The notes under the pieces: generated by a model
Database searches by the model: none
Told to the model about the DNA's origin: nothing
The model's input: only the letters and a program-made list of their open reading frames with translations
Part shown: piece after piece, positions 3,215 to 39,714 of the stretch
Position numbering within the stretch: position 1 is the first letter of the stretch
Layout of the letters: every line of letters starts with the position of its first letter
Source: Mustelus asterias
Lineage: Eukaryota
NCBI RefSeq assembly: GCF_964213995.1
Contig: NW_027590468.1
Location: 190,071 to 250,000, forward strand
Direction: 5' to 3'
Length of the DNA: 59,930 nucleotides
Program-made: the position numbers and the translations under genes

Positions 3215-3253
3215 CACAGTGAGTGAGGCTCCCGCGGGCCTCAGACAAAAAGT
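3215..3253 (+). other. 23-bp spacer recombination signal sequence
   Basis: CACAGTG-23 nt-ACAAAAAGT. Confidence 0.95.
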
Positions 3254-12245: not shown

Positions 12246-12700
12246 AGTTCTTGTCCGGAATCCGCTCGATCTCTGCAGCAGAGTGTGGGCGGCAGAGCAG
12301 ATAAATGCGGGGCGCTCTCGGAGAAAAGCACCCCAGCGATATTTAAAGGAACCATTTTGCTTTTGTTCAAACCAACAGGGAATCAGTCCAGAAAACTTGA
12401 GAAGTGCGTTTCCGTGCTGTATAACGTCAACAGACACTTTGAGCCTTCCCCGGCAGACTGGGGTGTACCAGAACCGTGTTCGACCAGCTGTCGAGTAACT
12501 GCAATCCAGTGTTACTGTCTGTCCTTCCTGAACCCTAAATTCAGAAGTACCTGGGGTAGTTTATCTTTGCTATTGTTTCCTGCAACAAAATATAGTATTG
12601 ATTAAATGTCTGGTAGAGAACGCTGGGAACGGGCAGTGGCGATTTAAACACAGAATCATTGGACAGCAAGATGAACAGTATTAGTAAAGAACACCGGGAC
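12246..12700 (-). pseudogene. Inverted TCR V pseudogene, family B-like
   Basis: Minus-strand acceptor ttgcag with exon from 12579; VQEGQTVTLDCSYS, FWY and VPLNIAG remnants with frameshifts; degenerate RSS with nonamer ACAAGAACT; leader relic ~12660-12700; promoter-like relic ~13020-13120. Confidence 0.75.
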
Positions 12701-19836: not shown

Positions 19837-20316
19837 ATGGGAATCCTTCTTGTTTTCAGCCTGTGTGTCTGTTTACCCCGTGAGTACTGGTCACACTAAA
19901 CTACATTGTGTGGATTGAATATAAAGCTGCCCCAGTCCATCCCAATTACAGACATTGTCTGGAGTTTTAGCCCCGTTGTGTGGTTCAGCTCTGATGGGCC
20001 TTTAAACTCTCTGTGTTTAATTTCCAGGATCTTTCAGTCAGTCAGTGGTACAGAGCCCGGAAGCGGTGACCAGGAAGGAATGTCAGTCCCTCACCATCAC
20101 CTGTGTTTTCTATGGTGGATTCTTTGCTCGTGCTTTGGAGAGGGCGGAATTCTTCAGACAAACACAGGCTGGGACAGAGTGGGAGCGGGTCTCCGGCGGA
20201 GGGAGATTTGTTGTGTCGGTGAATAAAGCAACAAAGACATTTTCGTTGGAAATTCGGGATGTGAGAGTTGAAGACGCCGCCACCTATTACTGTAAAGCTC
20301 ATTACGAAGGCTACGA
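19837..20316 (+). CDS. NAR-TCR variable segment, IgNAR-like (leader 19837-19879, V exon 20028-20316)
   Basis: MGILLVFSLCVCLP|gtgagt; VVQSPEAVTRKECQSLTITC..WERVSGGGRFVVSVNKATKTFSLEIRDVRVEDAATYYCKA. It has the NAR-like CDR2 deletion and extra FR1 Cys; RSS CACCGTG-22-ACTAAAACT at 20317-20354; TATAAA at 19807. Confidence 0.9.
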
Positions 20317-20680
20317 CACCGTGATGGGTCTCGGCTTCCCGCCATACTAAAACTCTCACTGAAGATTTTCACATAAACAAATGAAAAAGCGGAGTTAATC
20401 TTCCCTGACACCCGCACAGTCCCATCGCACACCGTCAATCCCACAGTCAAGTTTATAATGAGGATTTGATTATTACCGTTAACATTCTGAGTGTTAGAAA
20501 CATGGAGTGTGTGCGGAAGCTGATATCGTTCCCGGGATTGGCGTTGATGAATAAAGAATGGAAATGACTGATCCCAGTTACAAACCCAAACAAAAGATGG
20601 GATCATCGTCTCTCAGCTGGAACTGGGAACCGCAGTCCCCGCTATTTAATTAATGTCCCTACATCTCACACAGTATCTGG

Positions 20681-20753
20681 GGTTTTGATGCTGAATTATA
20701 ACACTGTGTAGTGGTTGGGACCACTCACAGTGAAAAGGAGCTGAGCAAATACC
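20681..20753 (+). other. NAR-TCR D segment (coding 20709-20725) flanked by 12/12 RSS
   Basis: GGTTTTGAT-12-CACTGTG [TAGTGGTTGGGACCACT] CACAGTG-12-GCAAATACC. Confidence 0.92.
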
Positions 20754-21101
20754 TGTGCACAATTACCTTATACATTCGCAGGGCCCAGAGAGAGAATTAT
20801 GGGTTGATGTTATTAGCGCTGCAATCTGGATTAATTACATTGCACTTTCCATCACTCACATCTTTCTTTGATATTTTTCTCAGTTAATATGAAGCTACTA
20901 TCTCCTACCTGGGGATATTTACTGAGAACACGGGGCCTCAAAAAGAACAGTTTGAACTGACAGAGACTTCAAAACATTGAAAAATATTTATTGATTTAAA
21001 TCCCCCGAATAATGGGAACTTCCAAATGACTGTGATGATTTCCCGTCAAGTTGAGTAGTCGGTAGTTCTTGTACGGGGAGACTGAGATCGGTATCAGTGT
21101 G

Positions 21102-21153
21102 TACGACTGGTATGATGTCGATGGATCAGGGACGGTGGTGACTGTCACAGCCG
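21102..21153 (+). CDS. NAR-TCR J segment (YDWYDVDGSGTVVTVTA)
   Basis: RSS AGTTCTTGT-22-CAGTGTG at 21064-21101; NAR-like xGxGTVVTV motif; phase-1 donor gtaagt at 21154. Confidence 0.92.
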
Positions 21154-23344
21154 GTAAGTGACTCCAAACCCCGCCGTGTTGCAAAATGTCTCGTTTAACG
21201 TTCACCGTCATTTTATTATCGTGATCTGTATCGTTTCAGTCCAATTGATACGGATAAGGATCTGTTTACAGATCCGTTACAGATTTTGATTTGGGAGCAG
21301 GACGTGATTTAGGAGTCGATCCAGGTCAGCCCTGGGGAAAGCGAGTGTGAGACCTGATGCAGAAGGCGGTCAGCGCTGTAGGGATAGTGGTGGTTGTAGG
21401 GATGGAAGTGGAGGGGTGGGGATTGGATGGGCTGTGATGTGAGGGTTGACAGTATTTGGGTCATTATTAGTTTAACGGGCACATCGGGGTTAACATCCAT
21501 ATCAAGGGCTTTCACAATCCTGATATTTTATAACAAATTATCGGCACTCTGGAATCCACCTTCGGTGTTAATTGTGACCGAGGGAGATCTGCCTGTCTCG
21601 AACAGCCCGGCAGTGGGATCGCAGAGCTCTATCCTGGGCAGTAGACTGCAGTCCCTGCCGTGTAATGTGAAGAAGCTACCGGTTGAATGAGATCAGTGCC
21701 ACTGCGGACAGTTCATTTAACAGTTCATCCAATACCTGTCCCGGGAGACAAATAGAATAAAAGAGACAACAGACTTCAGACATTAGAGACCCTGGTTAGT
21801 TCTAGATTGAATTTTTCAATAGAGAAATCAGTTACTGAAATTAGTGAAATTGTACCTGACATTCCTCTAAACATCCTCCATATAACCAATCACTTTCCTC
21901 ATTTTCCACCGTCAAAAGAGGCATAATTTAAAATGAAACCAAATCCCCCACACATGAAAACACTTTTGTTCGAAATGAATATAACTGGAGTTTTACCATT
22001 TTTATACTGAAATATTAAACTAAACTGACTTAAACCTATACTTTATTTCTAATGTCCAAAAACACTGAAGAGATTAGTTAAACTATCTTTGTTTCCTGAC
22101 AGTTGTCATTTACAGAAGACAATAAATACATAAATTCGAATAAATTCAAACAGGGAGAGCCAGAATGTGGATCTCGCTGTCACATTGAATGTTTGGAGCA
22201 GAGGCGAGTGGTACATTTATGGGAAGACTCGAAAATACTGAAAGGAGAACAGAATAGACCGACAGAGTGAGCTGGATTGAAATGATCAATTAGATTTCTG
22301 ACGGGTGAGGCTGGTCGGGTGTTTCTATGCAGACATCAGTGAGTTAGACCGAATTGCCTGTTCCTCTTCTGCAGTTTCCACACAATGTAAAACTTAGAGA
22401 AAATTCCGCCCAGAGAGAGCAGAAGAGAATCAGTTAAAGAGCAAAAAAAGAATTGAAATTGTCAGAGAGCCAGAAGAGGCAGTTCCCAGTGAGTAACTGT
22501 AAAACCACTGCAGAAACTGAACAGAATAAACCCAACTGACAACTGAGAGACTTTGGGAGAACTTTCCACGATTGCAACGAACCCAAACAGCGCAAAATAA
22601 ATGTTGAAACAAAATAAAACTGACTGTAAATATTTCCAAGTAAAGAGAAAAGGAGAAAAGATGTTCCTGATAGTTAGATAGCAGAAGAAAACCAAATAGA
22701 TGAACAAACAGAGATTCCCGGGAAGTGTTAAACAGATATAAAGGAATGACATTTGAGCACCGATGTTCAACATCATTCCATCCCCATTGGAGCTGATGAA
22801 TCACAGTCATTCCCTGTTGGATCTTGCTGTGCGCTGTGACGTAACGCAGCTGGGTTAGTCACTTGGAACGGATTGCCTCACTGATAATAAAATGTTCCCT
22901 CGTGTTTGTCTCTTAGGAAGGGAAATAGAAAGTGAAATGTAACATACATCATTGAATCATAGAGTGCAAAAGGGTGACATTCGGCCCCTCGAGTAGATGC
23001 AGCCCTTTATAAGTGAAATCCAGTTCTTCCCCTCAGTCATGAATTTTCCCCATAACCCTATTTTATTCCTGTTCCGGCGCTTGACTATTCCTGTGTGTTT
23101 GTCACTGTTGATTCAGCTCCCACCATCATTCTGACATTGCATTCCAGACCGTTGGATCTTGTTGTGTAAAGAAAACCTCATTTTCCACTGGTTTACAATA
23201 ATAATAACAGTGAATACAGTTCCATCAGATTTAAAATAATAATAACACCGGATAAAACTGAGCTACTCCCGCAATTGACACATTCCCCTGGTAAACAGTG
23301 ACTGAACCACAGAAGAAAACGCTGTTTCTTTTTTTATCCTCCAG

Positions 23345-23657
23345 ATTCTAGTTCCCTGGTGTCTAAGAATCCGCCTCTCCAAACCTCTGCTGCTGGTGAC
23401 ACGGTTGCTTTAAGCTGTGAATATTCAGGTCTCTGTCAGTACACAGTACACTGGTACAGTCAGTCCGCGGGGAAGGCTCTGAAATACCTGCTTCAGACAC
23501 ACACTTCAGGAGAGGAGAATAAAAAAACTGCTGCCGGGGGGAGAATTTCTGCTTCTATCGATTCTGCCGAGAAAATCAGCTGGTTAAAGATCTCCAAACT
23601 GAAACTGAGCGATTCCGCTGTGTATTACTGTGCACTGAGTCGGAGCACATCTGGGAC
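23345..23657 (+). CDS. Leaderless supporting TCR delta V of NAR-TCR
   Basis: Acceptor ttttatcctccag in frame with the NAR J; ..ALSCEYSGLCQYTVHWYSQ..DSAVYYCALSRSTSG; extra CDR1 Cys; no leader exon recognised upstream; RSS CACAGTA-23-ACAATAACC at 23658-23696. Confidence 0.9.
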
Positions 23658-23954
23658 CACAGTAGTTGAATCTCTCTTAACGCCCGTACAATAACCTCCC
23701 AGCACCACGGGAGAAAACCAAACTCTCTCAATAGCACCCTCCCAACACCACTCCCCACCACCGCCTTCCATCCCCACCGAGCGTACACCATTACTGACCC
23801 ACCCCCACTGGGACACGGCAGAAGTTGTGTGGCTTTTGCTACCAAATAAACCTGTTGGACTTTAGCCTGGTGTTGTTAAACTTCTTACACGGCAGAAGGA
23901 CAGAGAAAGGTGGACGAGACCACAATGGATCTTGTTATGGAATCAAACGGTGTG

Positions 23955-24015
23955 TAACATGGAGAGACTAGAAAGCTCATCTTTGGCAATGGAAGCAGGC
24001 TGATTGTGAAACCCA
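23955..24015 (+). CDS. TCR J segment 1 (*HGETRKLIFGNGSRLIVKP)
   Basis: RSS GGATCTTGT-12-CGGTGTG at 23927-23954; FGxG motif; donor gtaagt at 24016; first germline codon is TAA. Confidence 0.85.
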
Positions 24016-24379
24016 GTAAGTAGCTAATCCTGGATAATGATTACTCAACATGTTATTTTCCCTCCATGACATCATTGAGACATACAATCGCTGTGTTATT
24101 TCAATTATCACTGTTGTTGTATGGAACGGGTCAGCAGTTCTCATTGGGAATCCAAAGAGCAGCTTCACTGGGCATTGAGATAGAGCAATGAGAACTTTAT
24201 TGTTTCCACAATTCAGGATTGTTTCCTTAAAACATTTAACTGGCCTTTATCATGAAAACCCACCTGGGTAGCTGGCAAGGAGATGTATTGCTGAAATGAT
24301 TGTGTGTAATGCAATTAAATGATACATTGATAGATAGTTAAAAGAGGAACATCCCGATAGGGTCATAGAGCCATAGAGA

Positions 24380-25062
24380 TAGACAGCACTGTAAAAGTTG
24401 CTTCAGCCTAATGAGGGGCAGAGATAGAGTAGACAGGAAGACACTTATCCCCATAATAGAGGGATCAATGAGCAGTGCTTTTTGGGGGCGATGCATTGAG
24501 TTAAAGTGCGGGGTAGGAGAGTTAGAGAGAATGTGAAGAGAACTTTTCCCCCAAAGGGCGATAGGAGCCTGGGACTCAGTGCCTGAAAGGCCGGTGTTGA
24601 CAGAAACCCACACAACATTTAAGGTGTATTTGGATATGCACTTGAAATGCCATATCACAAACGGCAATGGGCCAAGTGCTGGAAAATAGGATTAGAAAAG
24701 TCAGCTGGTTTACCTTTGGTGGGGCAGACATGATGGGCCGCAGGACCTTTGATGTGCTGTAGACTTCTATTTTATTCCCTGGTGGGAGAGTCAAGGACCA
24801 GAGGCATAATCCTAGAGTAAGGGGTTGTCCATTTAAAGAAAGAGATGATGAAGAATTTCTTCTTTCGGATGGTTCCTAATCTGTGGACATCTTTACCGCA
24901 GAGGGCTGTCGTTAATAATGTTCAGTCCTGGGATAGACAGATTTTAAATCCACAAGGAAATTGAGGGTTATGGGCATACGGTGGGAAAATGGAGTTGAGG
25001 ATTATCACATCAGATCAGCCATGATCTCATTGAATGGTGAACCGAATAGCCGACTTCTGCTC
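24380..25062 (+). mobile_element. Two degenerate CR1 3' fragments
   Basis: Remnants of the FFxQRxVxxWNxLP region and CR1-like tails. Confidence 0.6.
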
Positions 25063-25156
25063 AGGGAGAGATATCAGGGGAGATGGAAAATATGAAGCAC
25101 AGTCGATTTATTGATCCAATAATGTGCCTTTTAAAATTGTGAAAATCGTAGTAACT

Positions 25157-25225
25157 AAGTGTGAGGGAGCGGGAAGGAGGAAACTGTTACATTTGGTTCG
25201 GGAGAGAAGCTAATTAAGACGAGTA
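25157..25225 (+). pseudogene. Degenerate J relic (ETVTFGSGEKLIKT)
   Basis: FGSG motif, AAGTGTG heptamer-like sequence and gtaac donor; no recognisable nonamer at 12 bp. Confidence 0.45.
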
Positions 25226-25305
25226 ACATTAACTTAAACTGAATGTAAGCTAGCCCTGTGTTCATGTGGCTGGTTCTATGTTTTGTGGTAGCCGTTAACA
25301 CTGTT

Positions 25306-25365
25306 CTATCTACCAAACTGAGAAGCTTGTCTTGGGCAAAGGGACAAAACTCACTGTGAAGCCCA
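25306..25365 (+). CDS. TCR J segment 2 (IYQTEKLVLGKGTKLTVKP), non-canonical
   Basis: RSS ATGTTTTGT-12-CACTGTT at 25278-25305 (the coding-proximal heptamer base is altered); LGKG replaces FGxG; donor gtaagt. Confidence 0.8.
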
Positions 25366-26801
25366 GTAAGTCCTCAACTATTTTCCATCCTGATCTATTT
25401 ACAGTAGGGGGATAATTGAAAGTTACAGTTCGAATATATAAGTCACGATATCGTGTTTTTTTTTCAATCAGTATCGACTTTTGGGGAGGAGGGGTAATAT
25501 AATGGCCATTAATAATTTGGGGAGGTCTTGTGGCGTAGTGTGTTAAAGTCTCTGCCTCTGAGCCAGAAACGTCGGGTTCGAGTTCTAATCAATGTACTTG
25601 ATGGCCAAGGAAGCTGAGTTCATAACGCGGCCCAACACTGGTGGTAAGAGTGGGAGCGATTCCTGCTCAGCCACGTTTGATATGGAGCGTGGCTTCCTAA
25701 ATCTCTAAGCCCCTGGCAACAGTATAGCGAACTGTTCCAAAAATAGCTAGCTCTGGAAGCAGATTATATATCCTTCCCTGACTCCTTACATAAGTTCCCA
25801 ACCACCTGGCATATTCGTTTCATTGGGTGACCTTGCATTATTGTGAGGTGGTGGAACTGGGTCGCGGCGGTGGCCTAGTGGTATTATCGCTAGATTATTA
25901 ATCCAGGAACTCAATAGTTTTCTGGCGACCCGCGTTCAAATCTCGCCACGGCAGATGGTGGAATTTGAATTCAATAATCTGCAATTAAGAATCTACAGTT
26001 GATAATGAAAGCCATTGTTGGAAAAACCCACCTGGTTGAGTAATGTCCTTCAGAGAAAGAAATCTGCCATCCTTATCTGACCTGGCCTACATATGCAATT
26101 TGGTTGACTCTCAAGGGCAATTGGGAATGAATAATAAATGCTGGTCAGCCACCGGTTGCCCATGTCCCATGAATGAATACAAAATATCTCACTTTTGGAA
26201 AATGAGCCCAAGTTGATTCAACTAAACGTAAACGCATCTTTCAGACTCAACTGACTTACCTCTTCGAAATCTAACAGGATTGTGACAATAAGAACAGATA
26301 ATGTTGGGAAAACCCCCAGCAGGTCAGGCAGCATCTGTAAGGAGAGAAAGCTTAGTTAACAAATTAAATACTATCCTTTGAATCGTATTTCTTTTCTGCC
26401 AGGGGTTGAGGCGTCACTGGCTAGGCCATGTTGCAAATTTCTGTTAAGGCATTTCAGAGATTGGCAGAGCAGGCGCTAAGGGCTGAATAGCCTTCCCTTG
26501 TTCCTATGTTTCCTAACCTATGTTCAGAGGCTAAATATATTTGTTGCAGGGGGAGGATGTGGATGCTATATTTGACTAGTGGCTACCTTGGCTCAGAAAT
26601 TCTTCACGTTGATAGAATCTTAGAGCATCCAAGGAGGGTATTCGGCCAATTTAGCCTTTGATGGTGCGAAGGGGAAGATATGCAATATCTGTTGCCTGCA
26701 GCGAATCAGTGACTATTCCAGCTTTGCCTTTGCCGTGAACTGCCTGAAATCTGAAACAGCTATCTCAATAGAAGGTTTCTGTCTGAGCAATTGTTACTGT
26801 G

Positions 26802-26851
26802 CTACGATAAGCTAACGTTCGGCAGCGGCACCCAGGTGACAGTTGTACCAA
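26802..26851 (+). CDS. TCR J segment 3 (YDKLTFGSGTQVTVVP)
   Basis: RSS GGTTTCTGT-12-TACTGTG at 26774-26801; donor gtgagt at 26852. Confidence 0.93.
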
Positions 26852-27174
26852 GTGAGTGTAAAGTCAGTGTTTCTTTTTCTTTCATTCCACATCTCCTCTG
26901 TGATCTAGTTTTCTGTTGTAAGTGTTCTAGTCAAGTTAGGCAGAGTGCCAATATAATATGTGGCATGCAGACGAAGAGATTGCACGGTTTTGAGTCAGTT
27001 TTGATCAAGCTCAGCTTACCCAGGCATTAGAGGGCCCCAGTATTATGGTATTGAACTGAGAAGCAGAATTGTGTCCTGTTAACGGGATAGGAAGATTCCA
27101 TCCAGAGAGTTAACCCAAAAGAAAGGGGGGAGACGAGCAAGCATCATTGTTCTGTTTAAACTCCAAAATCAAAT

Positions 27175-28000
27175 CTCTTACAGCAGAGATGGGGCCCTTC
27201 AGCCCGTCGAATCTCCACCAATAAAACGACACAAAATCTACACTAATCCCACTTTCTGGCACTTGGCCCATAACCTTGAATGTTACAACATTTGAACTGT
27301 TCATCCACCTACTGCTTAAATATTGAGAGTTTCCTCGCCTCTGTTACCCTCCCAGGCAGTGCATTCGAGACATCCACCACACTCAGGGTCAAAAACAAAT
27401 TTCTCAAATCCTCAGATCCCGCCTAAACGTCCTGCTACTCATCTTAAAATTATATCCCTCGTTATTGACCGGTTAACTAAGGGGAACAGCTGTTCCCACT
27501 TCCAGGCAATGCATTGCATGACAGAACCAATCGTTCTGTAAAAAAGTTATTTTCTCATTTCACTTTTTCCTCTGTTGGAAATCATTTTAAATCTCTGCCC
27601 TCTCGTTCTCCATCCTCTTGCGAGAGGGAACATCTCCTCCCTCTCTATTGTAACCAGCCCCCTCGTGATTTTGAACAGCTCGAATAAATCTCCTCTTAAC
27701 CTTCCCTCCAAGGGAACAGTTCCAATCTTTCCAACCTATTCTCATACCTCATAACTCATATTCTCATAACATTTCCAAGTTATTCTCAAACTGAAGTTGC
27801 TCATCCCTGCAACCGTCCTGTCAACCTTTTTACTTCACTCCCTCCAACGCATTCCCATCCTTCCTATAGTGGGGTTCCCAGAACTTTTCACAATATTCCA
27901 ATTGAGGTTTAATTGGATGTCTTGTATAAGTTCACCATAACCTCTTTGCTCTTGTACTCGATGCCTCGATCAATAAAGCCCAGAATGCTTCATTAGCCGC
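27175..28000 (-). mobile_element. Degenerate CR1 fragments
   Basis: Reverse-complement CR1 3' tail and RT C-terminal remnants. Confidence 0.55.
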
Positions 28001-29052
28001 TCTGGCAAAAAATACATAGAGGGTCTTAGAGTTACGATAGAACAACTGTACTGATAGGCAAACTGATGGCTTCGGTGGATAATTCCAACAGAAATAGGGT
28101 TCTCATAGCTGTTTAAAGAAAAATAATCCTGAGGGATGGAAAGTGCCCTGATGTGCCTTTGATGCCTCTTTCGAATGCTGTGTTAGCATTTACACTTTCA
28201 TAGGATATGAGCGTCACTGGAAAGGCGAACATTTGTTATTCATCCCTAATTGCCCTTTGAAATGAGTGACTTTCTCAGTTTTAGAGGGACAGTTGCGAGC
28301 CAACCACATTGCTCTTGGTCTGGAGTCACAAGTAGAACAGGACATATGAGATTTCCTTCCCTGAAGGACATTAGTGATTCTGTCGAGTCCTGAAGCGAAT
28401 CAAAAATTGTTTCATGGTCCCATTCCTGAGACTAGATTTCAACTCCAGATTTTATTAATCAAATTGAAGTTCCACCAGATGCCATGATGGGATTTATACG
28501 CACGTAGCCAAGTGTGTTGTCGTGACCTCTGTAATACTTTTTCAGTGGCATTATCATCCCGCCACTCATGGGCTTTTGAAACATTCGAGCAAAGGAACCT
28601 AAGTTTAATGGGAGAGTGGAAATAGAAACATAGGAAGTTGGAGCAGGAGTAAGCCATTCGGCCCTTCCAGCCTCCTCCACCATTCATTATGACCAAGGTT
28701 GGTCATCCAACTCAATAGCCTGTTCCTGCTTTCCCCCCATATCCTTCTATCCTTTTAGCCCAAGAGCCATATTTAATTCTTTCTTGGAAGCATAATGCTT
28801 TGGCTTCAACTGCTTTGTAATTGTGAATTGCACGGGATTTTCATTCTCTTGGTGAAAAAGAAATTCTCCTCATGTCAGTCCCATATCCTTTGGCAATGAA
28901 CCCCGGTTCTCGATCCTGCCGCCATCCTGCATCAACCCAGATGAACCGGCTGTGGAAGCAAATCGAATTTCAAAAACCTCGTCATGAAAAACAATCCTAA
29001 CATTGCTATTCATGTGGGTTATGTCAATTTTGTACCATCTGGTGTCACTATG

Positions 29053-29112
29053 CACACTTTGCAATCAGAAAGCTTATCTTTGGCAGTGGAACAAAACTCA
29101 CTGTCGAACCTA
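29053..29112 (+). CDS. TCR J segment 4 (HFAIRKLIFGSGTKLTVEP)
   Basis: RSS CAATTTTGT-12-CACTATG at 29025-29052; donor gtaagt at 29113. Confidence 0.88.
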
Positions 29113-30609: not shown

Positions 30610-30890
30610 TCAAAGTTCAAAGTTTATTTATTAGTCGCAAGTAAAACTTACATTAACACTGTAATTAAGTTATTGTGAAATTCCCCTAATCGCCACAGTC
30701 CGGCGCTTGTTCGGGTCAATGCACCTTAACCAGAACGTCTTTCAAAATGTGGGAGGAAACCGGAGGAAACCCACGCAGACACGGGGAGAACGTGCAAACT
30801 CCAGACAGACAGTGACCCAATTTGGGAATCGAACCCGGGTCCCTGGCGCTGTGTAGCAGTGCTAGCCACTGTGCTACCACGCCGCTCCCG
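30610..30890 (-). mobile_element. tRNA-derived SINE (HE1-related head)
   Basis: Same head/body as other SINE copies, with an alternative tail (aaagttcaaagttttatttattag). Confidence 0.75.
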
Positions 30891-33800
30891 CTAGCTGGCA
30901 TATTTCCTTCTCCAAAGGACATTGTTGAACTAAATGCACATTTGCTACCATACGCACCTAGTCTACTCTCAGCCGCCATCTTGGCAATAGCACATTCACT
31001 TCCCTCGTCCAAGTCACTAATGTATATTGTAAACAATTGTGTCCGGAGCATTGATCCCTGTGGCACTCCATCCTGAAAATACTCCTCTTTTCCCAACTCG
31101 CTGTCTCCTATCGATTAGGCAATTCTCTATCCATGCTAATATATTACCCCGAAAAGCACAGGCTCCTAAGTAATCTTTCGTCTGAGACCATGTCCAATTT
31201 TATTTTGCTGCAATGATAAGATGCAAACCATCGAACGACAAGGCTTTCTTAACGGCAATCGACGATGGTTGCCATAGTTTTTACTAGAGGCTAGATTTCG
31301 ATTAATTGAATTGAAATTGCATCAAGTGCTGGGGTGGGCATTGAATTCATTTCTTTAAGGGAATTAGCCTTGGTTTCTGCGTTGCTAATCCAGTGACATC
31401 GTCACTTCGCTACCACCATCCCATAATGTTGAATGAAGACTATTTAAGGATAGTTTCAATCATAAGCATGTTACAGAGCCAGAAATCAATGAGATTCATT
31501 TCGTTTTGTGGGCTTTATGAAATAATTAATATTCAGTGGCATTACCCAGCACTTTCCCGCACGGACATATAAAATATAGAGAAAGTTAGAAAATAAGAGC
31601 AGGAGTAGACCATTCGGCCTTTCGACCCTGCTCTGCCATTCGACACGACCGTAGCTGACCCTGTAACTCGACACCATACTCGCCCTCTCCCCATAATTTT
31701 TGACGCCTTAAGAGTATAGTAATATATTTCCATTTAAAATATATTCACTGATTTCGCATCCACAAACTTCTGCGGTAGATAACTACAGTTTTACCAGCCT
31801 CTGAGTGAGGGCATTTTTCCTCATCTCAGACCTAAATATCCAACCCGGTACACTGAAACTTTGACCCCTTGTTCTAGACCCCACCAAAGGAAACACCATC
31901 CCTGCACCCAGTCTGTCCGTGCCTGCTAGAATTCTGTATATTTCAATGACACCGCCTTTCATTGTTCGAACCTCCAGTGAATACAGATGCAGTCGCCCAA
32001 TCTCCCCTAAAAGGACAATCATGCCATTCCATTCTGGTGTGCTTTTTCTGCACTCTTTTTATTGCAAGTGTATTCTTTCTTCGATAAGGAGACCAAAACT
32101 GCACACAATATTAGATTTCGTCAAAAAAGGGTTGGATTTAGGAAATGTCTTAATGGAGGAAAGTGGCAAAATGCTTCCTGGTTTCGCTCCTGAAAGTCTT
32201 AAACATTAAACATCGTCTAAAATCCTGTTTGATTAAATCTTGGACTCCCCAACCAGCAGCAACTGTTCCTGTTTATCAACCCTCTCCTTTTGGGTATGAT
32301 TAAGTCACTCCTTAACTAAATTCCAGCGTTTTAGATTTAAACATCATTTACACTGTTAATCGAGTACTCTCAACATACATACTGCTTACAGAGTAAAGTT
32401 TCTTCTGCTTCTCTATTCAAGGAATTTTTAAATGCTGACTTGTAATTTTATGAAAAACGGAACATAAATGTTGCCGGTTCTGATTGCGGACTCTTTATTT
32501 CAATCATGATCTCAGATCTTCACATTCAAACATGAATATTAAGCTTCGAATATATTTTTCGGTCTCTCAGTGTTTGTGCTTTCTGTCTTCTTCACCTGTC
32601 TAAAGAATTTGAATAAAGACATTCGTTGATCAATCCTTACTCTTAGCATATAGACATTTATAAACAACATGGTTCTTTGATTTTGAATTCTAAATCTTAC
32701 ATTCAATTCTAACTTACATTTCCCTGCACTGAAAACATCCACTAGTTTTATCCATTCACAAACTATTAATATTTCTTTGCAAATCGGTGCTTCCAGCTAC
32801 GCTAATTACAATGCTGTTTGTGCGTCATTTGCAAACTAGCATATTCAGCATTCTATCATATTCTATCGCATTGTCTTAATAAATACAACTAAGCTGCATA
32901 TCATTCTGTATAGGTATATGTGTGTGTGTATGTGCGTTTGAGTGTGTGTGTGTGTTTATGTGTGTGTGTTTGTACTCCTCCATGTCTGTATGTCCATACC
33001 TGTCTGTGTAAGTGTCTGCGGCGTATTTAAGTATTCAAGCCTCGAAGCAACATAAGATCAGGCATTTGGCCCATCGATACTGATCGAACATTCAAACTGA
33101 TTATGGCACACTCACACACGTACCCACCCACACAAAAGCACACACACAAACACTCACACAGACGCACACAAGCACACACACACACGCACACACACATTCA
33201 TATTTGGTGACATACAAACGTACCATTTGCCTTCCTCACTGTTTGCTGTACCTGCACGCTAGCTTTTAGTGACCAGGTCTCTCTGGAAGTCAACTCTTTT
33301 CAACCTCGCACCATGTAGAAAATATTCTGTATTTCTGTTTTTTCCCCCCAACCATAGTGGATAACTTCATACTTAGTCACTTTTTAATCCCATCTGCCAT
33401 GTCTTTGCGCATTCACTCAGCCTGTCCAAATCTCCTTGAAGCCCCCGTTGCATCCTCCTCTCCATTATGTCTGTGCCATCAACAAGGTTTGAATTATTTT
33501 ATTTGGTCCCCACATCAAGTTTCTGCTTGTGTTCCAATCTCTGTGTTTGTTTCTGGGCATGTCTGCCTCTCAATACCTCAGTCTGAGTGTCTCTCGATTT
33601 GTGTGTGTGTTTGTGCGTGTGTGTGTACGCCTGTGTGCCTGTACGTCCATGCTTGTCTGTGTGAGTGTCTGCGGCGTGCAAATGTATTTCAATCTCAAAG
33701 GAGCATGAGTAGGCCATTTGGCCCAAAAATAATGCTCCAACTTTCAAACAGATCATGGTACACACACACACACACACACACACACACCCGCTCTCTCGCG

Positions 33801-34271
33801 CTCCTATTTGATTAGACAAATATGTATCATTTGCCTTCCACGTGTCTTGCTGTGCCGACATGCTAGTTTTTCGTGACCCATGAACAAGGACATCCAGCTC
33901 TCTCTGGCAACAACCCTGTCCGATCTCGCTCTGTTTAGGAAATACTCTGCCTTTCTGATGTCTTTTTTTTTCTGCCAGAATGGATAACTTCACACATATT
34001 CAGTTTTATTCCATCTGCCATGTTCTTGCCCATTGACTCAGCCTGTCCCAATTCCCTTCAAGTCCTCCTTGTATCCTCCTCACCATTAGTTGTGCTCATC
34101 AGCAAGATTGGAAATATTTTATTTGGTCCCCAAATCCAGTCTGTCTGTGTTTGTGTGTGGTTCTGGGTGTGTGTGTCTTTCAATGTCTCAGTGTGTGTCT
34201 GTGTATGTGTGCGTGTAGGGGGGGAGGGGGCGGTATGCCTGCCTCGAGATGCATGTGTCTGTCATAGTGTC

Positions 34272-35980
34272 ATAGAATCATAGAGGTTTACAACATGGAA
34301 ACAGGCCTTTTGGCCCAACTTTTTCATGGCGTCCTTTTTTTAAGCCCTAAGCTAGCCCCAATTGCCTGCATTTGGCCCATATCCCTCTATATCCATCTTA
34401 CCCCCATGTAACTATCCAAATGCTTTTTAAAACACAAAATTGTACCTGCCTCTACTACTACCTCTGGCAGCTTGTTCCGGACACTCACCACCCTCTGTGT
34501 GAGCAAAGTGCCCCTGTGGACACTTTTGTATCTCTCCCCTCTCACCTTAAACCCATGCCCTCTAGTTTCAGATTCCCCTACCTTTGGAAAAGGATATTGA
34601 CTATCTAGCTGATCTGTGCCCCTCATTATTTTATAAAGCTCTATGAGATCACCCCTCAGCTTTCTGCACTCCAGGGAAAAAAGACCCAATCTATCCAGCC
34701 TCTCCTTATAACTCAAACCACCAAGTCCCGTTAGCATCCTAGAAAATCTTTTCTGCACTCTTTCTAGTTTAATAATATCCTTTCTATAATAGGGTGACCA
34801 GAACTGTACACAGTATTCCAAGTGTGGCCTTACCAATGTCTTGTACAACTTCAACAAGACGTCGCAACTCCGATATTCAATGTTCTGCCCAATGAAACCA
34901 AGCATGCTGAATGCCGTCTTCAGCACTCTGCCCACCTGTGACTCCACTTTCAAGGAGTTATGAACCTGTACCCCTAGATCTCTTTGTTCTGTAACTCTTC
35001 CCAACGCCCTACCAGTAACTGAGTAAGTCCTGCCCTGGTTCAATCTACCAAAATGCCTCACCTCGCATTTGTCTAAATTAAACTCCATCGGCCATTCGTC
35101 AGCCCACTGGCCCAATTGATCAAGATCCCGTTGCAATCCGAAATAACCTTCTGCACTGTCCACTATGCCACAAATCTTGGTGTCACCTGCAAACTTACCA
35201 ACCATGCCTCCTATATTTTCATCCAAATCATTAATATAGATGACAAATAACCTTGGACCCAACACTGATCCCTGAGGTACACCGCTGGTCGCAGGCCTCC
35301 AGTTTGAATAACAACCTCTACAACCACCCTCTGGCTTCTGTCAAGCCAATTTTGTATCCATTTACCTTCCTCACCCTGGATCCCGTGAGATTTAACCTTA
35401 CGAACAACCTACCATGTGGAAACTTGTCAAAGGCCTTGCTAAATTCCATGTGGACAACATCAACTGCACTGCCCTCATCTACCTTCTTGGCTATCCCTTC
35501 AAAAACTCAATCAAATTTGTGACGCATGATTTTCCACTCACAAAGCCATGCTGACTGTCCCTAACCAGTCCTTGCGTCTCTAAATGCCTGGAGATCCTGT
35601 CTCTCAAAATACGTTCCAACAACTTACCCACCACGGATATGAGGCTCACTGGTCTATAGTTCCCAGGCTTTTCCCTGCAGCCCTTTTTAAACAAAGGCAC
35701 AACATTTGCCACCCTCCAATCTTCAGCACCTCACTTGTGACTAACGATGATTCAAATATCTCTGCTCGGGGTCCCGCAAATTCCTCCCTAGCCTCCCACA
35801 ATATCCAGCAATGCACATCATCAGGTCGCGGGAATTTATGTACCTCGATGCGCTTTAAGACTTCCAGCATCTCCTTCTCTGTAATACGTACATCACTATT
35901 TATTTCCCCAAGTTCCCTCACATCCATGCTTTTCTCAATAGTAAATACTGATGAGAAATCTTCATTTAGGATCTCACCCA
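34272..35980 (-). mobile_element. CR1-type LINE, ~1.7 kb RT region
   Basis: ORFs 34387..35265 and 35491..35712: ANVVPLFKKG..PGNYRPVSL, QHGF, IYINDLD, KFAGDTK, RPHLEYCVQFWSP. Confidence 0.92.
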
Positions 35981-36314
35981 TGTGTGTGTGTGTGTGTGTG
36001 TGTTTGGTGTGTGTTTGTGTGCATATGTGTCTGTGCATGTATGTGTGTCTGCTGATGTGCCTGGGCATGTGTGCGTGTGAATGTGTATGTGTGCATGTGT
36101 GTGTGAGAGAGAGAGAGAGGCGTCACTCCTTAGCCTTCTCTGTGCGAAGGCAAAAAGCCCTAGCTTATCCAGTCTCAGCATTCGGTAAATTAATGGAGAA
36201 ACTTATATAGGGTTAAGACACAGAAAAAATGCGGTCTAATCGAATGGCGCGGCAGGTTGGAGGAGGTCATCCTGTTGGATTCTGATTCTTTCCTTTTATT
36301 TCATAAATTTCCAG

Positions 36315-36626
36315 AGGCGAAAGACCCGAAAATCCCAAAATTGAGCGTCTTTTACCCGCCAGTGCCACCGGGAACAACCGACATCGACACAGCTGCAGTT
36401 TGCTTGGCCTCGGATTTCTCCCCCAAGACAATCAAGCTCTCCCTGTACACGGGATCCGGTCAGGAGGTCAATGTGACAAGATCCAGTGTCCTATTGGAGA
36501 GCGGGTATTACAGGAGCTCGGGTTTCCTCGCTTTCGCCCAATCCGGGAAATCGCCAAACATCACGTGCAAGGCATTTCACGATAAACAAAATTACTCAGT
36601 AAACATCCCGCCCACAGCTGAAATTG
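36315..36626 (+). CDS. TRDC: TCR constant region exon 1 (C1-set Ig domain), delta-like
   Basis: Phase-1 acceptor compatible with all Js; PKLSVFYP..AAVCLASDFSPK..NVTRSSVLL..SSGFL..NITCKAFH. A full two-Cys domain with a C-x-x-x-H F-strand fits C-delta better than the reduced C-alpha fold; donor gtaagt at 36627. Confidence 0.85.
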
Positions 36627-37089
36627 GTAAGTTTATTTTATTTTCGTTCACGTGATGTGGGTGCCGTTGGCTTGGCCAGCATTTATCGCCCGTCCAAAGC
36701 TGCCCTTCAGCAGAGGGCATTTAAGAGTCACTTGCCGGCCAGACAATGCAAGGACGGCAGATTTCCCTCTCTAAAGGATATTACTGAACCAGATGAGTTT
36801 TAACGATAATCGACAATGATTTCATGGTCATCATTAGACTTCTAATTCCATTTTTAAAAAAATAATCAAATTTCGCATCTGTCATGGCGGATTTCGAACA
36901 CGCATCCCCAGATCAATATTCTGGGTCGTTGGAGTACTAGCCCAGTGACAATGCCACTGCGCCACTGCCTCCTCTGAGAGTGTTTTATGATAGGAAGAAC
37001 GTCCACTAAATATTATCCATCCTCTTAACGACCGAAGGACTCTCGGTGTCATCGTCACCCAAAATGTAGTCTTTTTGAAAGATTAGCTG

Positions 37090-38645
37090 ACTAATGATTG
37101 AAGGTCAATTATTCTAGCCTGGGGACTTCACTGCAGGAGTTCCTCAGTGTCTCAGGCCCAACCAGCTTCAGTTGCTTCACCAATCACCTTCACTCCATTA
37201 TAAGGTCAGAATTTGGGATGTTCGCTGATGACTGAACAATGTTCAGCACCATTCATGACACCTCAGACCTTGAAGTAGTGCATTACAAATGCAGCAAGAG
37301 CTGGACAGTATCTCGGCTTTGACTGAGAAACTGCAAATAACATTTGCGCCACATATGTTTTTTTAATAACAGATTTTTAAAAAATATACTTTTCCAATTC
37401 AATCAAATCAAATCCAATTCAGAGTCTCAACAAGTTGAGACATTTCAGATCCAGGCTGACAAGACAGGGCGAGCGACCAAACCACCCTGTCCTGGGCCTG
37501 ATCTACATGAGCCAAGCTGGTTGGAGAAGGGGGAGGTTCCTCCTCCAAGACTTGAGCTCATTTGCATCTTAGCCAAAAGGCCGATGTTCCAGGCAATGAC
37601 CACCTTCAACAGGAAAGGAGCTAACAATCGGCTCTTGGCATTTACTGGCTGAATCCCCCCATCAACATCCTGAGGGTTAACATTGCCCAGAAACTGGACT
37701 GGACTATCCATGTAAGTGCTGTAGCTGCAAGAGCATGTCAGAGGTTGGGAATCCTGTGGTGAATAACGTATCTCCTGAACCCCCAAATCCTCTGCACCAT
37801 CCACAAGACATAGTCATGATTGTGGTAGTGTATTCGCCACTTGCCTGGATGGGTGCAACTCAAACAACACTTAGAAATTTGACAAGATCCAGGACGAAGC
37901 AGCTCCGCTTGATTCAACGTTTATTTATTAGTGTCGCAAGTAGGCTTACATTAAAGCTGCAATGAAGTTACTTTGAAAAGCCCCTCGTCGCCACACTCCG
38001 GCGCCTGTTCGGGTGCATTGATGAAAAAGTTTGCATGGCCAATGCACCGAACCAGCACATCTTTCAGACTGTGGGAGGAAATTGCAGTACCCAGAGCAAA
38101 CCTCGCTGACACGGGGAAAACATGCAGACTCTGCACAGTCACCCAATCCGGGAATTGAACCCAGGTCCCTGCCGCTGTGGGGAGGGGTGGGGGCAGCAGT
38201 ACTAACCACTGTGCCGCTTTAGCATTAAGTACTCCATTCACAAACATCCACTTCTTCCACCACCGATGCACAGTGGCAGCAGTGTGGACCATCCACAAGA
38301 TACACAGCAGTAACTCTCCAAGTCTCCTTCGGCTGAATCTTCCAAACTCACGACCGCTATCATTTCGGAGGACAAGGGCAGCAGATACCTGGGAACACCA
38401 TCATCTGGACGTTCCCCTCCAAGTCACTCAGCATCCTGACTTGGAAATGTATCGGCAGTTCCTTCACTGTGGCTGGGTCAAAATAGTGGAACTTCTTCCC
38501 TAACAGCACTGCGTGTGTGCCTACACCTCACAGACTGCAGAGGTTCAAGCAGGAGACTCACAACCATCTTCTGAAGTGGGCAATTAGGGATTGGCAATAA
38601 ATGCTGGCCTGCCAGCGATGTCCACATTCCGTAAATGAATAAAAA
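37090..38645. mobile_element. Nested LINE/SINE fragments in constant-gene intron 1
   Basis: RT remnants GVPQ and GMFADD at ~37130-37240; SINE (-) at ~37915-38220; SINE/LINE tail ending aaatgaataaaaa at ~38640. Confidence 0.6.
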
Positions 38646-39133
38646 TAATAATAGCTAACTATTATAATTCAGGGCAGTGTCCAGGAGCCGCAGCTGCTGG
38701 TGCACCACCGAGTTTAGGAAATTATTAAATACTAACCAGGGCACTGGAGAACCCCGCTCCTCTGGAGAAATGCCCTGATACCATTTAATCCACTGCAGAG
38801 CTGAAATCAGGCCTCGGATTCACGACTTCTTCGGAAGACGGTGAAATACTGCACCGATGGATCGGCCCTGGATCCTGGGTTTTAATCCCTGATGGGGAAT
38901 CGACCCTGCACTCATTGAACTCAGATTTGGGCCGAACTAAATGGCAGAGCTACCAATGTTTCTCCGTTGTGAATAATCAAGTGAACAAGTCCAATCGTGC
39001 TATTTGATTCTTACTTACTTCGTGGTTATTGGTTATGACAACAACATTATTCAAAGTGATCCTGAGACCAAACATGGTTACAGTAATGTCACTTGCTCAC
39101 TTAATAAGTCAAATGTCTTTTTTGCCCTTCCAG

Positions 39134-39190
39134 ATAAACCTAAATGCCCTACAAATGATTCCTCGACAGAATCAAGTGACACGGAAAACG
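39134..39190 (+). CDS. TRDC: TCR constant exon 2 (connecting peptide with interchain Cys)
   Basis: cttccag|DKPKCPTNDSSTESSDTEN|gtatgt; phase 1/1. Confidence 0.85.
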
Positions 39191-39604
39191 GTATGTGCTT
39201 TCTTCAACATTTATCAAAGTAAAATACTTGCAAATAGACAGATTGATAAGTGGACAAACAGGCACGGATACAGACCCGGAGATCGAGTGATAAACATATA
39301 GTGAGATGGGGAGAAAGATAGATTGTCACACAGAGTGAGGGAGAGAGATATATAAATCGAGGGGGAAAGCGAGAGAAGAGGAGAGGCGGGGAGAGAGAGA
39401 GAGAAATTCAGAGTGAAAGAGAGATAAAGATAGATAGACAGGCAGGCAGACGGGCGGACGGACGGACAGAGATGGACAGACGGACGAAAGTCAAGCAGTT
39501 AGATAATGGAAAAAATATCACATTAGTGGTATACAGTTGTTTTTCAATACCAAATGATATATCCATTAAACCAGATCTATCATTTGTTTGTCTTATTTTG
39601 GCAG

Positions 39605-39714
39605 ATCGACTGAGGGTGAACTTTTTGTCTTTGACGGTGATGGGGCTCAGAATTTTGTTTTTCAAGAGCATTGTCTTCAATGTCATGATGACGGCCAGGG
39701 TGTGGCTATTTTGA
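39605..39714 (+). CDS. TRDC: TCR constant exon 3 (transmembrane)
   Basis: DRLRVNFLSLTVMGLRILFFKSIVFNVMMTARVWLF*; alpha/delta-type TM with R and K for CD3 assembly; TGAG|gtaag donor immediately after the stop. Confidence 0.92.

What the first reader, a model, noticed from the sequence alone, without database searches (positions are those of the whole stretch)
19837..39714. D-delta-less NAR-TCR locus: supporting V faces J segments directly, feeding a delta-like C
Seen: NAR V(22)-D(12/12)-J(22), then a leaderless supporting V(23) whose RSS ends ~230 bp before the first 12-RSS J. I found no heptamer-flanked D between 23697 and 23926 or among the later Js. Four Js follow, three of them ~60 nt with alpha-like R/EKL(I/V)xG cores, then a delta-like C. 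I recognised no J-alpha array or C-alpha in the next 20 kb. Established: described shark NAR-TCR has a VDJ-rearranged NAR domain on a V-D-J rearranged TCR delta domain, and TRD normally sits upstream of J-alpha/C-alpha. Inference: this may be a separate or derived mini-locus encoding a VDJ(NAR)+VJ+C-delta-like chain, i.e. an alpha-style VJ chain using a delta-type constant region.
Basis: partly seen in the sequence, partly recalled or inferred. Interest (0 to 1): 0.9.

Follow-up and report, generated by a model that had tools for sequence, protein, structure and literature searches.

The report
D-less shark NAR-TCR delta mini-locus
This is one of many self-contained copies of a shark three-domain T-cell receptor gene in which the second variable domain seems to be built by joining V straight to J, without the usual D piece, much as in the platypus TCR-mu gene.

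Summary
The window is Mustelus asterias DNA: all five exons of NCBI model P0028 match it exactly. It carries, in order:
- four intact TRAV/DV-like Vs and one pseudogene V;
- a NAR-type V(22-RSS)-D(12/12)-J(22-RSS);
- a leaderless supporting V (23-RSS);
- four 12-RSS J segments;
- a three-exon delta-type C.

Two RSS-pair scans found no credible D between the supporting V and C. No J, V or C-like sequence follows C in the last 20 kb.

The mini-locus reading is supported. Ten M. asterias gene models on nine contigs carry this C type, and their C regions form one clade.

"Alpha-style" is not needed: the Js are the type joined to delta-type C in other elasmobranchs.

New here:
- The supporting V tail runs 26 nt past the Cys codon, against 19-23 nt inferred for 36 of 37 other shark models. 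It ends in a D-like CTGGGAC.
- A decayed D-like core with a 23-RSS-like element abuts the J1 RSS.

D-lessness therefore looks derived, possibly through a germline V-D join.

No RNA runs were found, so expression and junction content are untested. The scan's earlier notes, unchecked, report many NAR-TCR cassettes on other pieces of this genome, and D-delta segments on some pieces.

Closest analogue: platypus TCR-mu clusters.

The parts
2910..3253 (+). Conventional TRAV/DV-like V1 with 23-RSS (heptamer 3215-3221, nonamer 3245-3253)
   Evidence: (V-set E=5e-11)
5341..5705 (+). Conventional V2 with 23-RSS (heptamer 5667, nonamer 5697-5705, 9/9)
   Evidence: (V-set E=1.5e-16)
6975..7290 (+). V3, pseudogene (in-frame stops); 89% copy of V1
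   Evidence: (D5)
8290..8664 (+). V4 with 23-RSS (heptamer 8626); 88% copy of V2
   Evidence: (D6)
10145..10522 (+). V5 with 23-RSS (heptamer 10484). One open frame runs from an ATG through the V region, so there is no leader intron.
   Evidence: V-set E=4.7e-10
12286..12570 (-). Inverted, frameshifted V pseudogene. Its 24-spacer RSS lies at 12246-12285.
13456..13483 (+). Weak D candidate: 28 nt, 11-nt spacer on the 5' side, RSS scores 17 and 16 of 22. It lies upstream of the NAR cassette, so the supporting V could not use it by deletion.
   Evidence: 5 of 40 shuffles give at least one such pair
19837..19879 (+). NAR-TCR V leader exon
   Evidence: P0003 residues 1-17
20028..20354 (+). NAR-type V exon (20028-20316) plus 22-spacer RSS
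   Evidence: VNAR structures, best E=3e-20
20681..20753 (+). NAR D (20709-20725) with a 12-RSS on both sides
21064..21153 (+). NAR J (21102-21153) behind a 22-spacer RSS; donor GT at 21154, phase 1
22763..22852 (+). Alternative 5' exon used by NCBI model P0028, inside the NAR J to supporting V intron. It does not look like a signal peptide by eye.
23345..23657 (+). Leaderless supporting V-delta exon with a CDR1 Cys. The tail after the Cys codon is 26 nt and ends TCTGGGAC.
   Evidence: (V-set E=9.6e-14)
23658..23696 (+). 23-RSS of the supporting V (CACAGTA, 23-nt spacer, ACAATAACC)
   Evidence: 19 of 22
23807..23824 (+). D-like core ACTGGGA (23807-23813), then the first copy of the 11-bp target-site duplication CACGGCAGAAG (23814-23824)
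   Evidence: read directly; inference
23825..23887 (+). Tail of a high-copy repeat, inserted between the two duplication copies
   Evidence: depth bin 23694-23890 is 1,000-fold or more above neighbouring bins; loose ends at 23825 and 23888
23888..23926 (+). Decayed 23-RSS-like element (CACGGCA, 23-nt spacer, GACCACAAT) that directly abuts the J1 nonamer
   Evidence: read directly. The homologous in-frame stretches in P0029 and P0004 read like a 23-RSS in P0004.
23927..24015 (+). J1: 12-RSS 23927-23954, coding 23955-24015
   Evidence: 16 of 22
25278..25365 (+). J2: 12-RSS with weak heptamer CACTGTT (25299-25305), coding 25306-25365. The motif is LGKG, not FGKG, so J2 may be defective.
26774..26851 (+). 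J3: 12-RSS 26774-26801, coding 26802-26851
   Evidence: 20 of 22
29025..29112 (+). J4: 12-RSS with heptamer CACTATG (29046-29052), coding 29053-29112
36315..36626 (+). C-delta-type exon 1 (Ig C1-set domain)
39134..39190 (+). C exon 2 (connecting peptide with Cys)
39605..39714 (+). C exon 3 (transmembrane segment with R and K, then the stop codon)
16317..18645 (.). Left arm of a large inverted repeat. It contains the 187-N stretch at 16549-16735.
   Evidence: I1-I5, I7, I9
53904..56186 (.). Right arm of the inverted repeat, 93-100% complementary to the left arm. The two arms bracket the whole block from the NAR V to C.

Best explanation
The window holds one self-contained NAR-TCR / TCR-delta cluster of Mustelus asterias, one of at least ten paralogous units that each carry their own delta-type C.

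Inferred working:
1. RAG assembles the N-terminal NAR domain from V(22/23-RSS), D(12/12) and J(22/23-RSS).
2. Separately, RAG joins the leaderless supporting V (23-RSS) directly to J1, J3 or J4 (12-RSS). This obeys the 12/23 rule and needs no D.
3. The transcript is spliced leader > NAR VDJ exon > supporting VJ exon > C exons 1-3. The splice phases fit.
4. The product is a three-domain chain whose transmembrane segment carries R and K.

The upstream conventional Vs also carry 23-RSSs, so they could join the same Js to make two-domain V-J-C-delta chains.

The D-less state looks derived rather than primitive. The supporting V tail carries 7 extra nucleotides that end in a D-like CTGGGAC. A decayed D-like core with a 23-RSS-like element sits directly against the J1 RSS. 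I give about 0.35 to the extra nucleotides being a germline V-D coding joint.

Because both the V tail and the Js are long, direct joins would still give a CDR3 of roughly 12-17 residues.

Shown: the anatomy, the absence of a recognisable D, the multi-copy C and the exon phases. Inferred: that rearrangement and expression happen at this unit.
For: Anatomy and RSS spacers.

No credible D between 23697 and 36314:
- Strict pair scan.
- Weighted scan: the only pair with both RSSs at 16 or more of 22 is J2's own RSS plus a chance site. At 14 or more there are 22 pairs, against a shuffle mean of 14.

Species and exon structure: five of five exons of NCBI model P0028 are identical to the window.

C is delta-type:
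- phmmer found 23 proteins at E<=0.001.
- Of the ten hits whose names I looked up, the two named for their constant region are 'T cell receptor delta constant', from Hypanus sabinus and Leucoraja erinacea.
- In the PDB list, the only TCR chain among the 60 rows shown is a TCR delta, at E=0.0032. The rows above it are immunoglobulin constant regions and antibody Fab chains.

Multi-copy C: ten M. asterias C-bearing models lie on nine contigs. Their C regions form one clade (support 89/93) with two subgroups. Five of the ten models join NAR V, supporting V and C.

The Js are the delta-linked type.

NAR-TcR hallmarks met: VNAR-like V; a-b loop Cys, no Trp in the WYRK position, a leaderless supporting V and a CDR1 Cys (set against passages of PMC1845163).

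V tail: 26 nt here. By my reading of 37 read-through models, 29 have 19 nt, one has 20 nt, six have 21-23 nt and one is unreadable.

One of three cDNA-like NAR-TcR sequences (P0066) has a supporting-domain junction short enough for a D-less join.
Against: - No RNA evidence. None of the four runs found is on record as RNA. The contigs laid were DNA-like, mostly 95-99% alike, and no listed piece bridges the supporting V RSS to J1. Expression, junction content and local assembly continuity are therefore all unconfirmed.
- The scan requires recognisable RSSs. J2 and J4 were missed by the first scan, so a D with decayed signals could be missed too.
- J2 looks defective, the J1 heptamer is weak, and a repeat has inserted between V and J1. 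These are possible signs of a decaying unit.
- Two of three cDNA-like NAR-TcR sequences from another shark have 6-12 extra residues in the supporting-domain junction. This fits D use there.
- Unchecked scan notes say other pieces of this genome have D-delta. The supporting V could in principle reach a D in a downstream unit.
- The tail lengths of the other sharks are back-inferred from protein read-throughs, not from DNA.
- Some of the ten C models may be haplotigs.
Confidence: 0.55

Rival explanations
1. The supporting V is a germline V-D join. RAG activity in the germ line fused a D-delta onto the V, leaving the D's 3' 23-RSS. The domain is then V(D)J in content, although only one somatic join (VD to J) is needed. 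This overlaps with the best explanation rather than excluding it.
For: - The tail is 7 nt longer than the 19-nt class and longer than any of the 36 other supporting V ends I could read.
- The extra letters end in a G-rich CTGGGAC.
- The same core, CTGGGA followed by CAC, recurs 150 nt downstream in front of a decayed 23-RSS-like element beside J1.
- A V-D join would keep a 23-RSS, as is seen here.
- A scan note made the same suggestion (s1-893121).
Against: - Seven nucleotides could be an ordinary indel.
- Paralogue P0051, with a normal-length tail, reads the same heptamer (CACAGTA, by back-translation). That hints that the signal is of V type.
- The D-like relic is still present downstream, so a second D would have to be assumed.
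Confidence: 0.35
2. The unit is a decaying duplicate that is not used. The D was lost because nothing selects for it, and the layout says nothing about how working NAR-TCR chains are made.
For: - J2 has LGKG and a weak heptamer, and the J1 and J4 heptamers are imperfect.
- A repeat has inserted between the V RSS and J1.
- One of the five conventional Vs is a pseudogene, and an inverted V pseudogene is also present.
- The unit lies on a 318-kb contig, among many paralogues.
- No RNA run was found.
Against: - The NAR leader and V, D, J, supporting V and all three C exons are open, with intact splice sites and matching phases.
- The RSSs of NAR V, NAR D, NAR J, supporting V and J3 score 18-20 of 22.
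- The C branch in the tree is short, at 0.019.
Confidence: 0.2
3. A working D exists but was missed. It could have degenerate signals inside the interval, it could be the weak candidate at 13456-13483, or it could be a D in a neighbouring unit reached by long-range joining.
For: - The first scan missed two of the four real Js.
- One pair upstream scores 17 and 16 of 22.
- Unchecked notes report D-delta elsewhere in this genome.
- V segments resume beyond the end of the window.
Against: - Inside 23697-36314 nothing beats chance.
- The 13456 candidate lies upstream of the supporting V, has an 11-nt spacer and a 28-nt core, and 5 of 40 shuffles do as well.
Confidence: 0.12
4. Assembly artefact: a D-bearing stretch was dropped, or the block was mis-joined.
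For: - No listed contig bridges 23696 to 23927, because a high-copy repeat breaks the contigs there.
- A 187-N stretch sits inside the left arm of a 2.3-kb inverted repeat. The link and orientation between the upstream Vs and the block from NAR to C are therefore less certain.
Against: - The stretch from the supporting V to C lies on uninterrupted sequence, 16736-59930.
- The repeat insertion has a clean 11-bp target-site duplication, which fits real DNA.
- The Js and their RSS flank are shared with paralogous models.
Confidence: 0.05

Closest known systems
Shark NAR-TcR (doubly rearranging TCR delta; Criscitiello et al. 2006, known to me only through citing passages in PMC1845163, PMC5931798 and PMC12227049)
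   Same: - A NAR-type V with a leader, an a-b loop Cys and no Trp in the WYRK position.
- Its own D and J.
- A leaderless supporting V-delta with a CDR1 Cys, spliced behind the NAR J.
- A delta-type C.
   Different: - The citing passages describe two separate VDJ rearrangements and a place inside the TCR delta locus. One review calls cartilaginous-fish TCR loci translocon-type (PMC6795676).
- Here no D serves the second domain.
- The unit has its own Js and C, and it is one of at least ten C-bearing units.
Platypus TCR-mu clusters (V-mu1, D, J, V-mu2, J, C), from passages of PMC3457774 and PMC7615758
   Same: - A three-domain chain.
- Tandem or multiple clusters, each with its own C.
- The first V is built with D, while the supporting V is built by direct V-J joining because the Ds are missing.
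   Different: - Not homologous. The N-terminal V here is NAR-type, not VH-type, and the C is shark delta-type.
- This is convergence, not membership.
- Expression is shown in platypus but not here.
Marsupial TCR-mu germline-joined V-mu-j, from passages of PMC7615758
   Same: If the extra tail is a germline V-D joint, this is a partly pre-joined supporting V. That would be a step in the same direction.
   Different: - The marsupial exon is fully joined and invariant, and is thought to have arisen by retrotransposition.
- Here an RSS remains, and a somatic join to J is still required.
Shark Ig heavy-chain clusters with germline-joined segments, as cited in passages of PMC7615758 and PMC1845163
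   Same: - Many small V-(D)-J-C units instead of one translocon.
- Germline RAG footprints.
   Different: Those are Ig loci. This is a TCR delta-type unit.

Membership tests
NAR-TcR | N-terminal V of the IgNAR type, with its own leader | tested here: met
   The best solved-structure matches are VNAR domains (E=3e-20). Leader exon 19837-19879.
NAR-TcR | Cys in the a-b loop and no canonical Trp in the WYRK motif (PMC1845163 passages) | tested here: met
   The translation reads ...TRKECQSLTITC... and ...FFRQ....
NAR-TcR | The NAR V rearranges with its own D and J | tested here: met
   V 22-RSS, D 12/12, J 22-RSS. Actual rearrangement was not observed.
NAR-TcR | The supporting V-delta lacks a leader, has a splice acceptor and has a Cys in CDR1 | tested here: met
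   Acceptor at 23343-23344. There is no ATG or leader. CDR1 reads SGLCQYT. The phase fits the NAR J donor.
NAR-TcR | The second domain is also made by V-D-J rearrangement ('separate VDJ rearrangements') | tested here: not met
   No RSS-flanked D lies between 23697 and 36314.
NAR-TcR | The constant region is TCR delta | tested here: met
   The two looked-up relatives that are named for their constant region are TRDC of stingray and skate. The window's C falls among the shark C sequences of this type, in a tree that also holds the two batoid rows labelled TRDC. No TRAC sequence was available as an outgroup.
NAR-TcR | Expressed as a three-domain chain in T cells | not testable with these tools
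   No RNA run was found. The laid contigs are DNA-like.
Canonical TRA/TRD translocon | A single TRDC lying between the V array and a J-alpha array plus C-alpha | tested here: not met
   There is no J, V or C-like sequence in 39715-59930. Ten C-bearing models lie on nine contigs.
Canonical TRA/TRD translocon | D-delta segments with a 12-RSS and a 23-RSS upstream of J-delta | tested here: not met
   Only a decayed D-like relic is present at 23807-23926.
TCR-mu (mammalian) | Homology: VH-related V-mu and the mammalian C-mu lineage | tested here: not met
   The V is NAR-type and the C is shark delta-type. The resemblance is in layout only.
TCR-mu (mammalian) | Cluster layout V-D-J, supporting V(-J), C, repeated in the genome | tested here: met
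   The window's layout. Five other M. asterias models join NAR V, supporting V and C. Whether the units lie in tandem was not seen.

The most novel reading that the evidence does not exclude
In Mustelus, NAR-TCR has left the single TCR alpha/delta translocon and become a family of TCR-mu-like clusters, each with its own Vs, NAR V-D-J, supporting V, J-delta set and C-delta. In this cluster, a germline RAG event fused the D onto the supporting V. The second domain is then made by a single VD-to-J join and has restricted diversity. This would be a shark caught part-way along the path that mammals took from the platypus state (D-less V-J) to the marsupial state (pre-joined V) in TCR-mu. It would also be the first partly germline-joined TCR V outside marsupials.
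Probability: 0.3. Interest if true: 0.8.

Novelty: new variant of a known kind. Interest (0 to 1): 0.6.

Why it matters
NAR-TCR and mammalian TCR-mu are the two known three-domain T-cell receptor chains. They are held to be convergent.

In mammals, the supporting domain lost its D segments (platypus) and was then frozen in the germ line (marsupials). This is read as evidence that the supporting domain is a structural pedestal rather than an antigen-binding site.

A shark unit whose supporting V faces its Js with no D, and which is repeated as a cluster with its own C, would extend the convergence from protein architecture to gene organisation and diversification rules. It would also challenge the statement that cartilaginous-fish TCR loci are simple translocons. 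And it would add a TCR example to the germline RAG footprints known from shark Ig clusters.

The idea is directly testable by junction sequencing from smooth-hound thymus or spleen.

Tried and rejected
- **Comparative loci.** All statements about other units rest on protein models.
- **Gene models as junction evidence: rejected.** The NCBI models read through RSSs or use cryptic splice sites. For example, 'DTVM' is the translated NAR V heptamer, and 'SCYGIK[RLP]C' is the translated J1 12-RSS. They say nothing about somatic joints.
- **RNA evidence.** One run search listed four runs, and none is on record as RNA. One read-laying run gave short DNA-like contigs, no V-J joints, and no piece bridging V to J1.
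- **'The long V tail is itself proof of a V-D join': weakened.** A long tail (19-23 nt after the Cys codon) is the norm for supporting Vs in nine shark species. Only the extra 7 nt are special to this unit.
- **'Long Js are germline D-J joins or J-alpha': rejected.** J1 orthologues of similar length occur in Scyliorhinus and in another Mustelus unit.
- **Site at 19195-19217 as a D: rejected.** It lies inside transposon-like sequence and has weak signals.
- **Tandem 23-RSS arrays behind the supporting V.** Scan notes report these in other units. None is present here.
- **Literature.** Six searches found no paper describing multiple TRDC units or a D-less NAR-TCR in sharks. Four key papers are not held: PMC1458790, PMC7909615, PMC7039070 and PMC3222143. 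Supplements, for example table S1 of PMC12227049 with locus coordinates, were not opened. The claim 'not in print' is therefore limited to this library.

Full report
**What is there.**
The window is shark antigen-receptor DNA. Reading it, scanning for recombination signals and translating give this order on the + strand:
- Five TRAV/DV-like Vs with 23-RSSs, ending at 3214, 5666, about 7290 (a pseudogene), 8625 and 10483.
- An inverted V pseudogene near 12.3 kb.
- A 187-N stretch at 16549-16735.
- A NAR-type V: leader 19837-19879, V exon 20028-20316, 22-spacer RSS.
- A D with 12-RSSs on both sides (20709-20725).
- A J behind a 22-spacer RSS (21102-21153, donor at 21154).
- A leaderless V (23345-23657) with a 23-RSS (23658-23696).
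- Four Js with 12-RSSs: 23955-24015, 25306-25365, 26802-26851 and 29053-29112.
- Three C exons: 36315-36626, 39134-39190 and 39605-39714.

Pfam places the Vs in V-set and C exon 1 in C1-set. The N-terminal V matches solved VNAR domains at E=3e-20.

**Source.**
NCBI model P0028 from Mustelus asterias lies on a 317,896-bp contig. It is built from five exons that are each identical to the window. The window is therefore part of that contig.

**The C.**
- phmmer of C exon 1 against 1.84 billion representatives gave 23 proteins at E<=0.001.
- I looked up names for ten of them. The two named for their constant region are 'T cell receptor delta constant', from a stingray (40% identity) and a skate (34%). 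Four carry automatic gene-model names such as 'T cell receptor alpha chain MC.7.G5-like' or 'Ig heavy chain Mem5-like', two are 'uncharacterized' or 'hypothetical', and two are unnamed.
- Among solved structures the matches are weak. The top rows are immunoglobulin constant regions and antibody Fab chains. The only TCR chain among the 60 rows shown is a TCR delta, at E=0.0032.
- I had no shark TRAC sequence to use as an outgroup.

**Is a D missing?**
- The strict pair scan required CAC and GTG next to the coding flank. In it, the NAR D (both RSSs 14 of 16, as 12-D-12) is the only pair in the whole window in which both RSSs score that high.
- My first single-RSS scan missed J2 and J4, so I built a weighted score with a maximum of 22. 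On it every real RSS in the window scores 16-21.
- Between 23697 and 36314, on both strands, one 12-D-23 pair has both signals at 16 or more. It is J2's own RSS plus a chance site inside J2. The shuffle mean is 0.075 pairs, and 2 of 40 shuffles have at least one.
- At 14 or more there are 22 pairs on the + strand, against a shuffle mean of 14 with range 5-31.
- Upstream, in 10523-19837, one pair at 13456-13483 reaches 17 and 16. It has an 11-nt spacer and a 28-nt core, and 5 of 40 shuffles do as well. It also lies upstream of the supporting V.
The caveat is that a D with decayed signals cannot be excluded.

**Nothing follows C.**
The J-motif scan on both strands found only J1-J4; its pattern does not match the NAR J. 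tblastn with 11 shark TCR proteins found no hit beyond 39711. Scan notes, unchecked, place further V segments 5-34 kb beyond the end of the window.

**A family of such units.**
- Searches with the C domain found ten M. asterias gene models with this C type on nine contigs. C-domain identity to P0003 is 82-99% for the seven other models listed. Five of the ten models join NAR V, NAR J, supporting V and C.
- A further six M. asterias models hold a NAR V plus a supporting V without a C.
- In a maximum-likelihood tree of 21 C regions, the ten Mustelus rows form one clade (support 89/93) with two subgroups. The window groups with P0003 and P0027.
- Heptranchias perlo has two C models on one contig.
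- Some of these models may be haplotigs, and I could not see their DNA.
- A review in the library says cartilaginous-fish TCR genes are in translocon arrangement (PMC6795676, passages). Six searches found no paper on multiple TRDC units in sharks.

**The Js are not alpha-like in any special sense.**
J1, J3 and J4 fit the pattern xKLxFGxGTxLxVxP. This is the J type seen joined to delta-type C in eight other elasmobranch sequences: P0004, P0005, P0006, P0007, P0010, P0013, P0034 and P0075. J1-like segments of similar length, with the same translated 12-RSS ('SCYGIK.C'), occur in Scyliorhinus and in another Mustelus unit.

**The V tail.**
- Thirty-seven gene models from nine shark species read through the germline end of a supporting V.
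- I back-read the translated heptamer in each. It starts 19 nt after the Cys codon in 29 models (the '...TAQ*' type), at 20 nt in one, at 21-23 nt in six (Hemiscyllium and Stegostoma), and is unreadable in one.
- In the window it starts after 26 nt. The extra letters replace a single G with TCTGGGAC. A scan note had flagged this tail (s1-893121).
- These tail lengths are inferred from proteins, not from DNA.

**A relic beside J1.**
- Directly upstream of the J1 nonamer lies a 39-nt element (23888-23926) with the shape heptamer, 23-nt spacer, nonamer (CACGGCA ... GACCACAAT). It is too decayed to work.
- The homologous in-frame stretch in Scyliorhinus model P0004 reads like a good 23-RSS.
- In the window, a high-copy repeat tail (23825-23887) has inserted there, with an 11-bp target-site duplication. 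The original 5' flank is ...ACTGGGA (23807-23813). That is the same core as the V-tail extension.
- No 5' 12-RSS is recognisable.
- I read this as a dead D or its signal. That is inference.

**How it would work.**
The 12/23 rule lets the supporting V join J1-J4 directly. The splice phases fit: NAR J ends in phase 1 and the supporting V supplies the other two bases of a D codon; each J ends in phase 1 and C exon 1 completes a K codon. With a 26-nt tail and 16-27 nt of J before the FG motif, untrimmed D-less joins give a CDR3 of 14-17 residues. CDR3 length alone would therefore not reveal the lack of a D.

**Against my reading.**
- There is no RNA. The run search listed four runs, none on record as RNA.
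- The contigs laid on 23300-29200 were DNA-like, mostly 95-99% alike, and broke at the repeat. They confirm neither expression nor V-to-J1 continuity.
- J2 looks defective, and J1 and J4 have imperfect heptamers.
- Three cDNA-like NAR-TcR sequences share one C (P0017, P0052, P0066; the tool gives no species). Two of them have 6-12 extra residues at the supporting-domain junction, and one has about two.
- Scan notes report D-delta on other pieces of this genome (unchecked).

**Comparison.**
Passages of PMC3457774 and PMC7615758 describe platypus TCR-mu clusters in which the second V lacks D segments and joins J directly. [quoted passage not shown] The window's layout matches the platypus one in form but not by descent.

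**Verdict.**
The mini-locus and D-less readings are supported at the level of sequence. 'Alpha-style' is unnecessary. D-lessness looks derived, and function is untested. This is a new variant of a known kind.

Noticed in passing
window 16317-18645 and 53904-56186: A 2.3-kb inverted repeat, 93-100% complementary, brackets the whole block from the NAR V to C, with about 35 kb between the arms. The 187-N stretch lies inside the left arm. The repeat could mediate inversion of the unit, or it could mark an uncertain scaffold join.
   Followed up: partly
window 23814-23898: A 63-bp tail of a very high-copy repeat has inserted between the supporting V RSS and J1. It is flanked by an 11-bp target-site duplication, CACGGCAGAAG.
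   Followed up: yes
window 12246-12570 (- strand): A frameshifted V pseudogene lies in the opposite orientation to all other segments. Its 24-spacer RSS points left.
   Followed up: partly
window 10145-10522: V5 has a continuous open frame from an ATG through the V region, with no leader intron. It ends YSCAVR instead of YYC.
   Followed up: no
window 22763-22852: NCBI model P0028 starts at an exon inside the NAR J to supporting V intron. By eye, its 30 residues do not look like a signal peptide. It may be a sterile transcript or a prediction artefact.
   Followed up: no
protein P0004 (Scyliorhinus canicula) and P0009 (Cetorhinus maximus): In P0004, a VH-like V end runs in frame through a translated 23-RSS directly into the translated J1 12-RSS (about 63 nt in all). 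The V and J may therefore be separated only by back-to-back signals. In P0009, the supporting V reads straight into a J. Either could be a germline oddity or a cryptic-splice artefact.
   Followed up: no
proteins P0071 and P0054/P0058 (other sharks): Read-throughs behind the supporting Vs translate as repeated 23-RSS units. This agrees with scan notes of tandem 23-RSS arrays in other units of this genome. No such array is present in this window.
   Followed up: partly
window 2949-3248 vs 7002-7301; 5065-5768 vs 8026-8727: The upstream Vs form a tandem duplication of a V1-V2 pair, with copies 87-89% identical and a 3-4 kb period.
   Followed up: no
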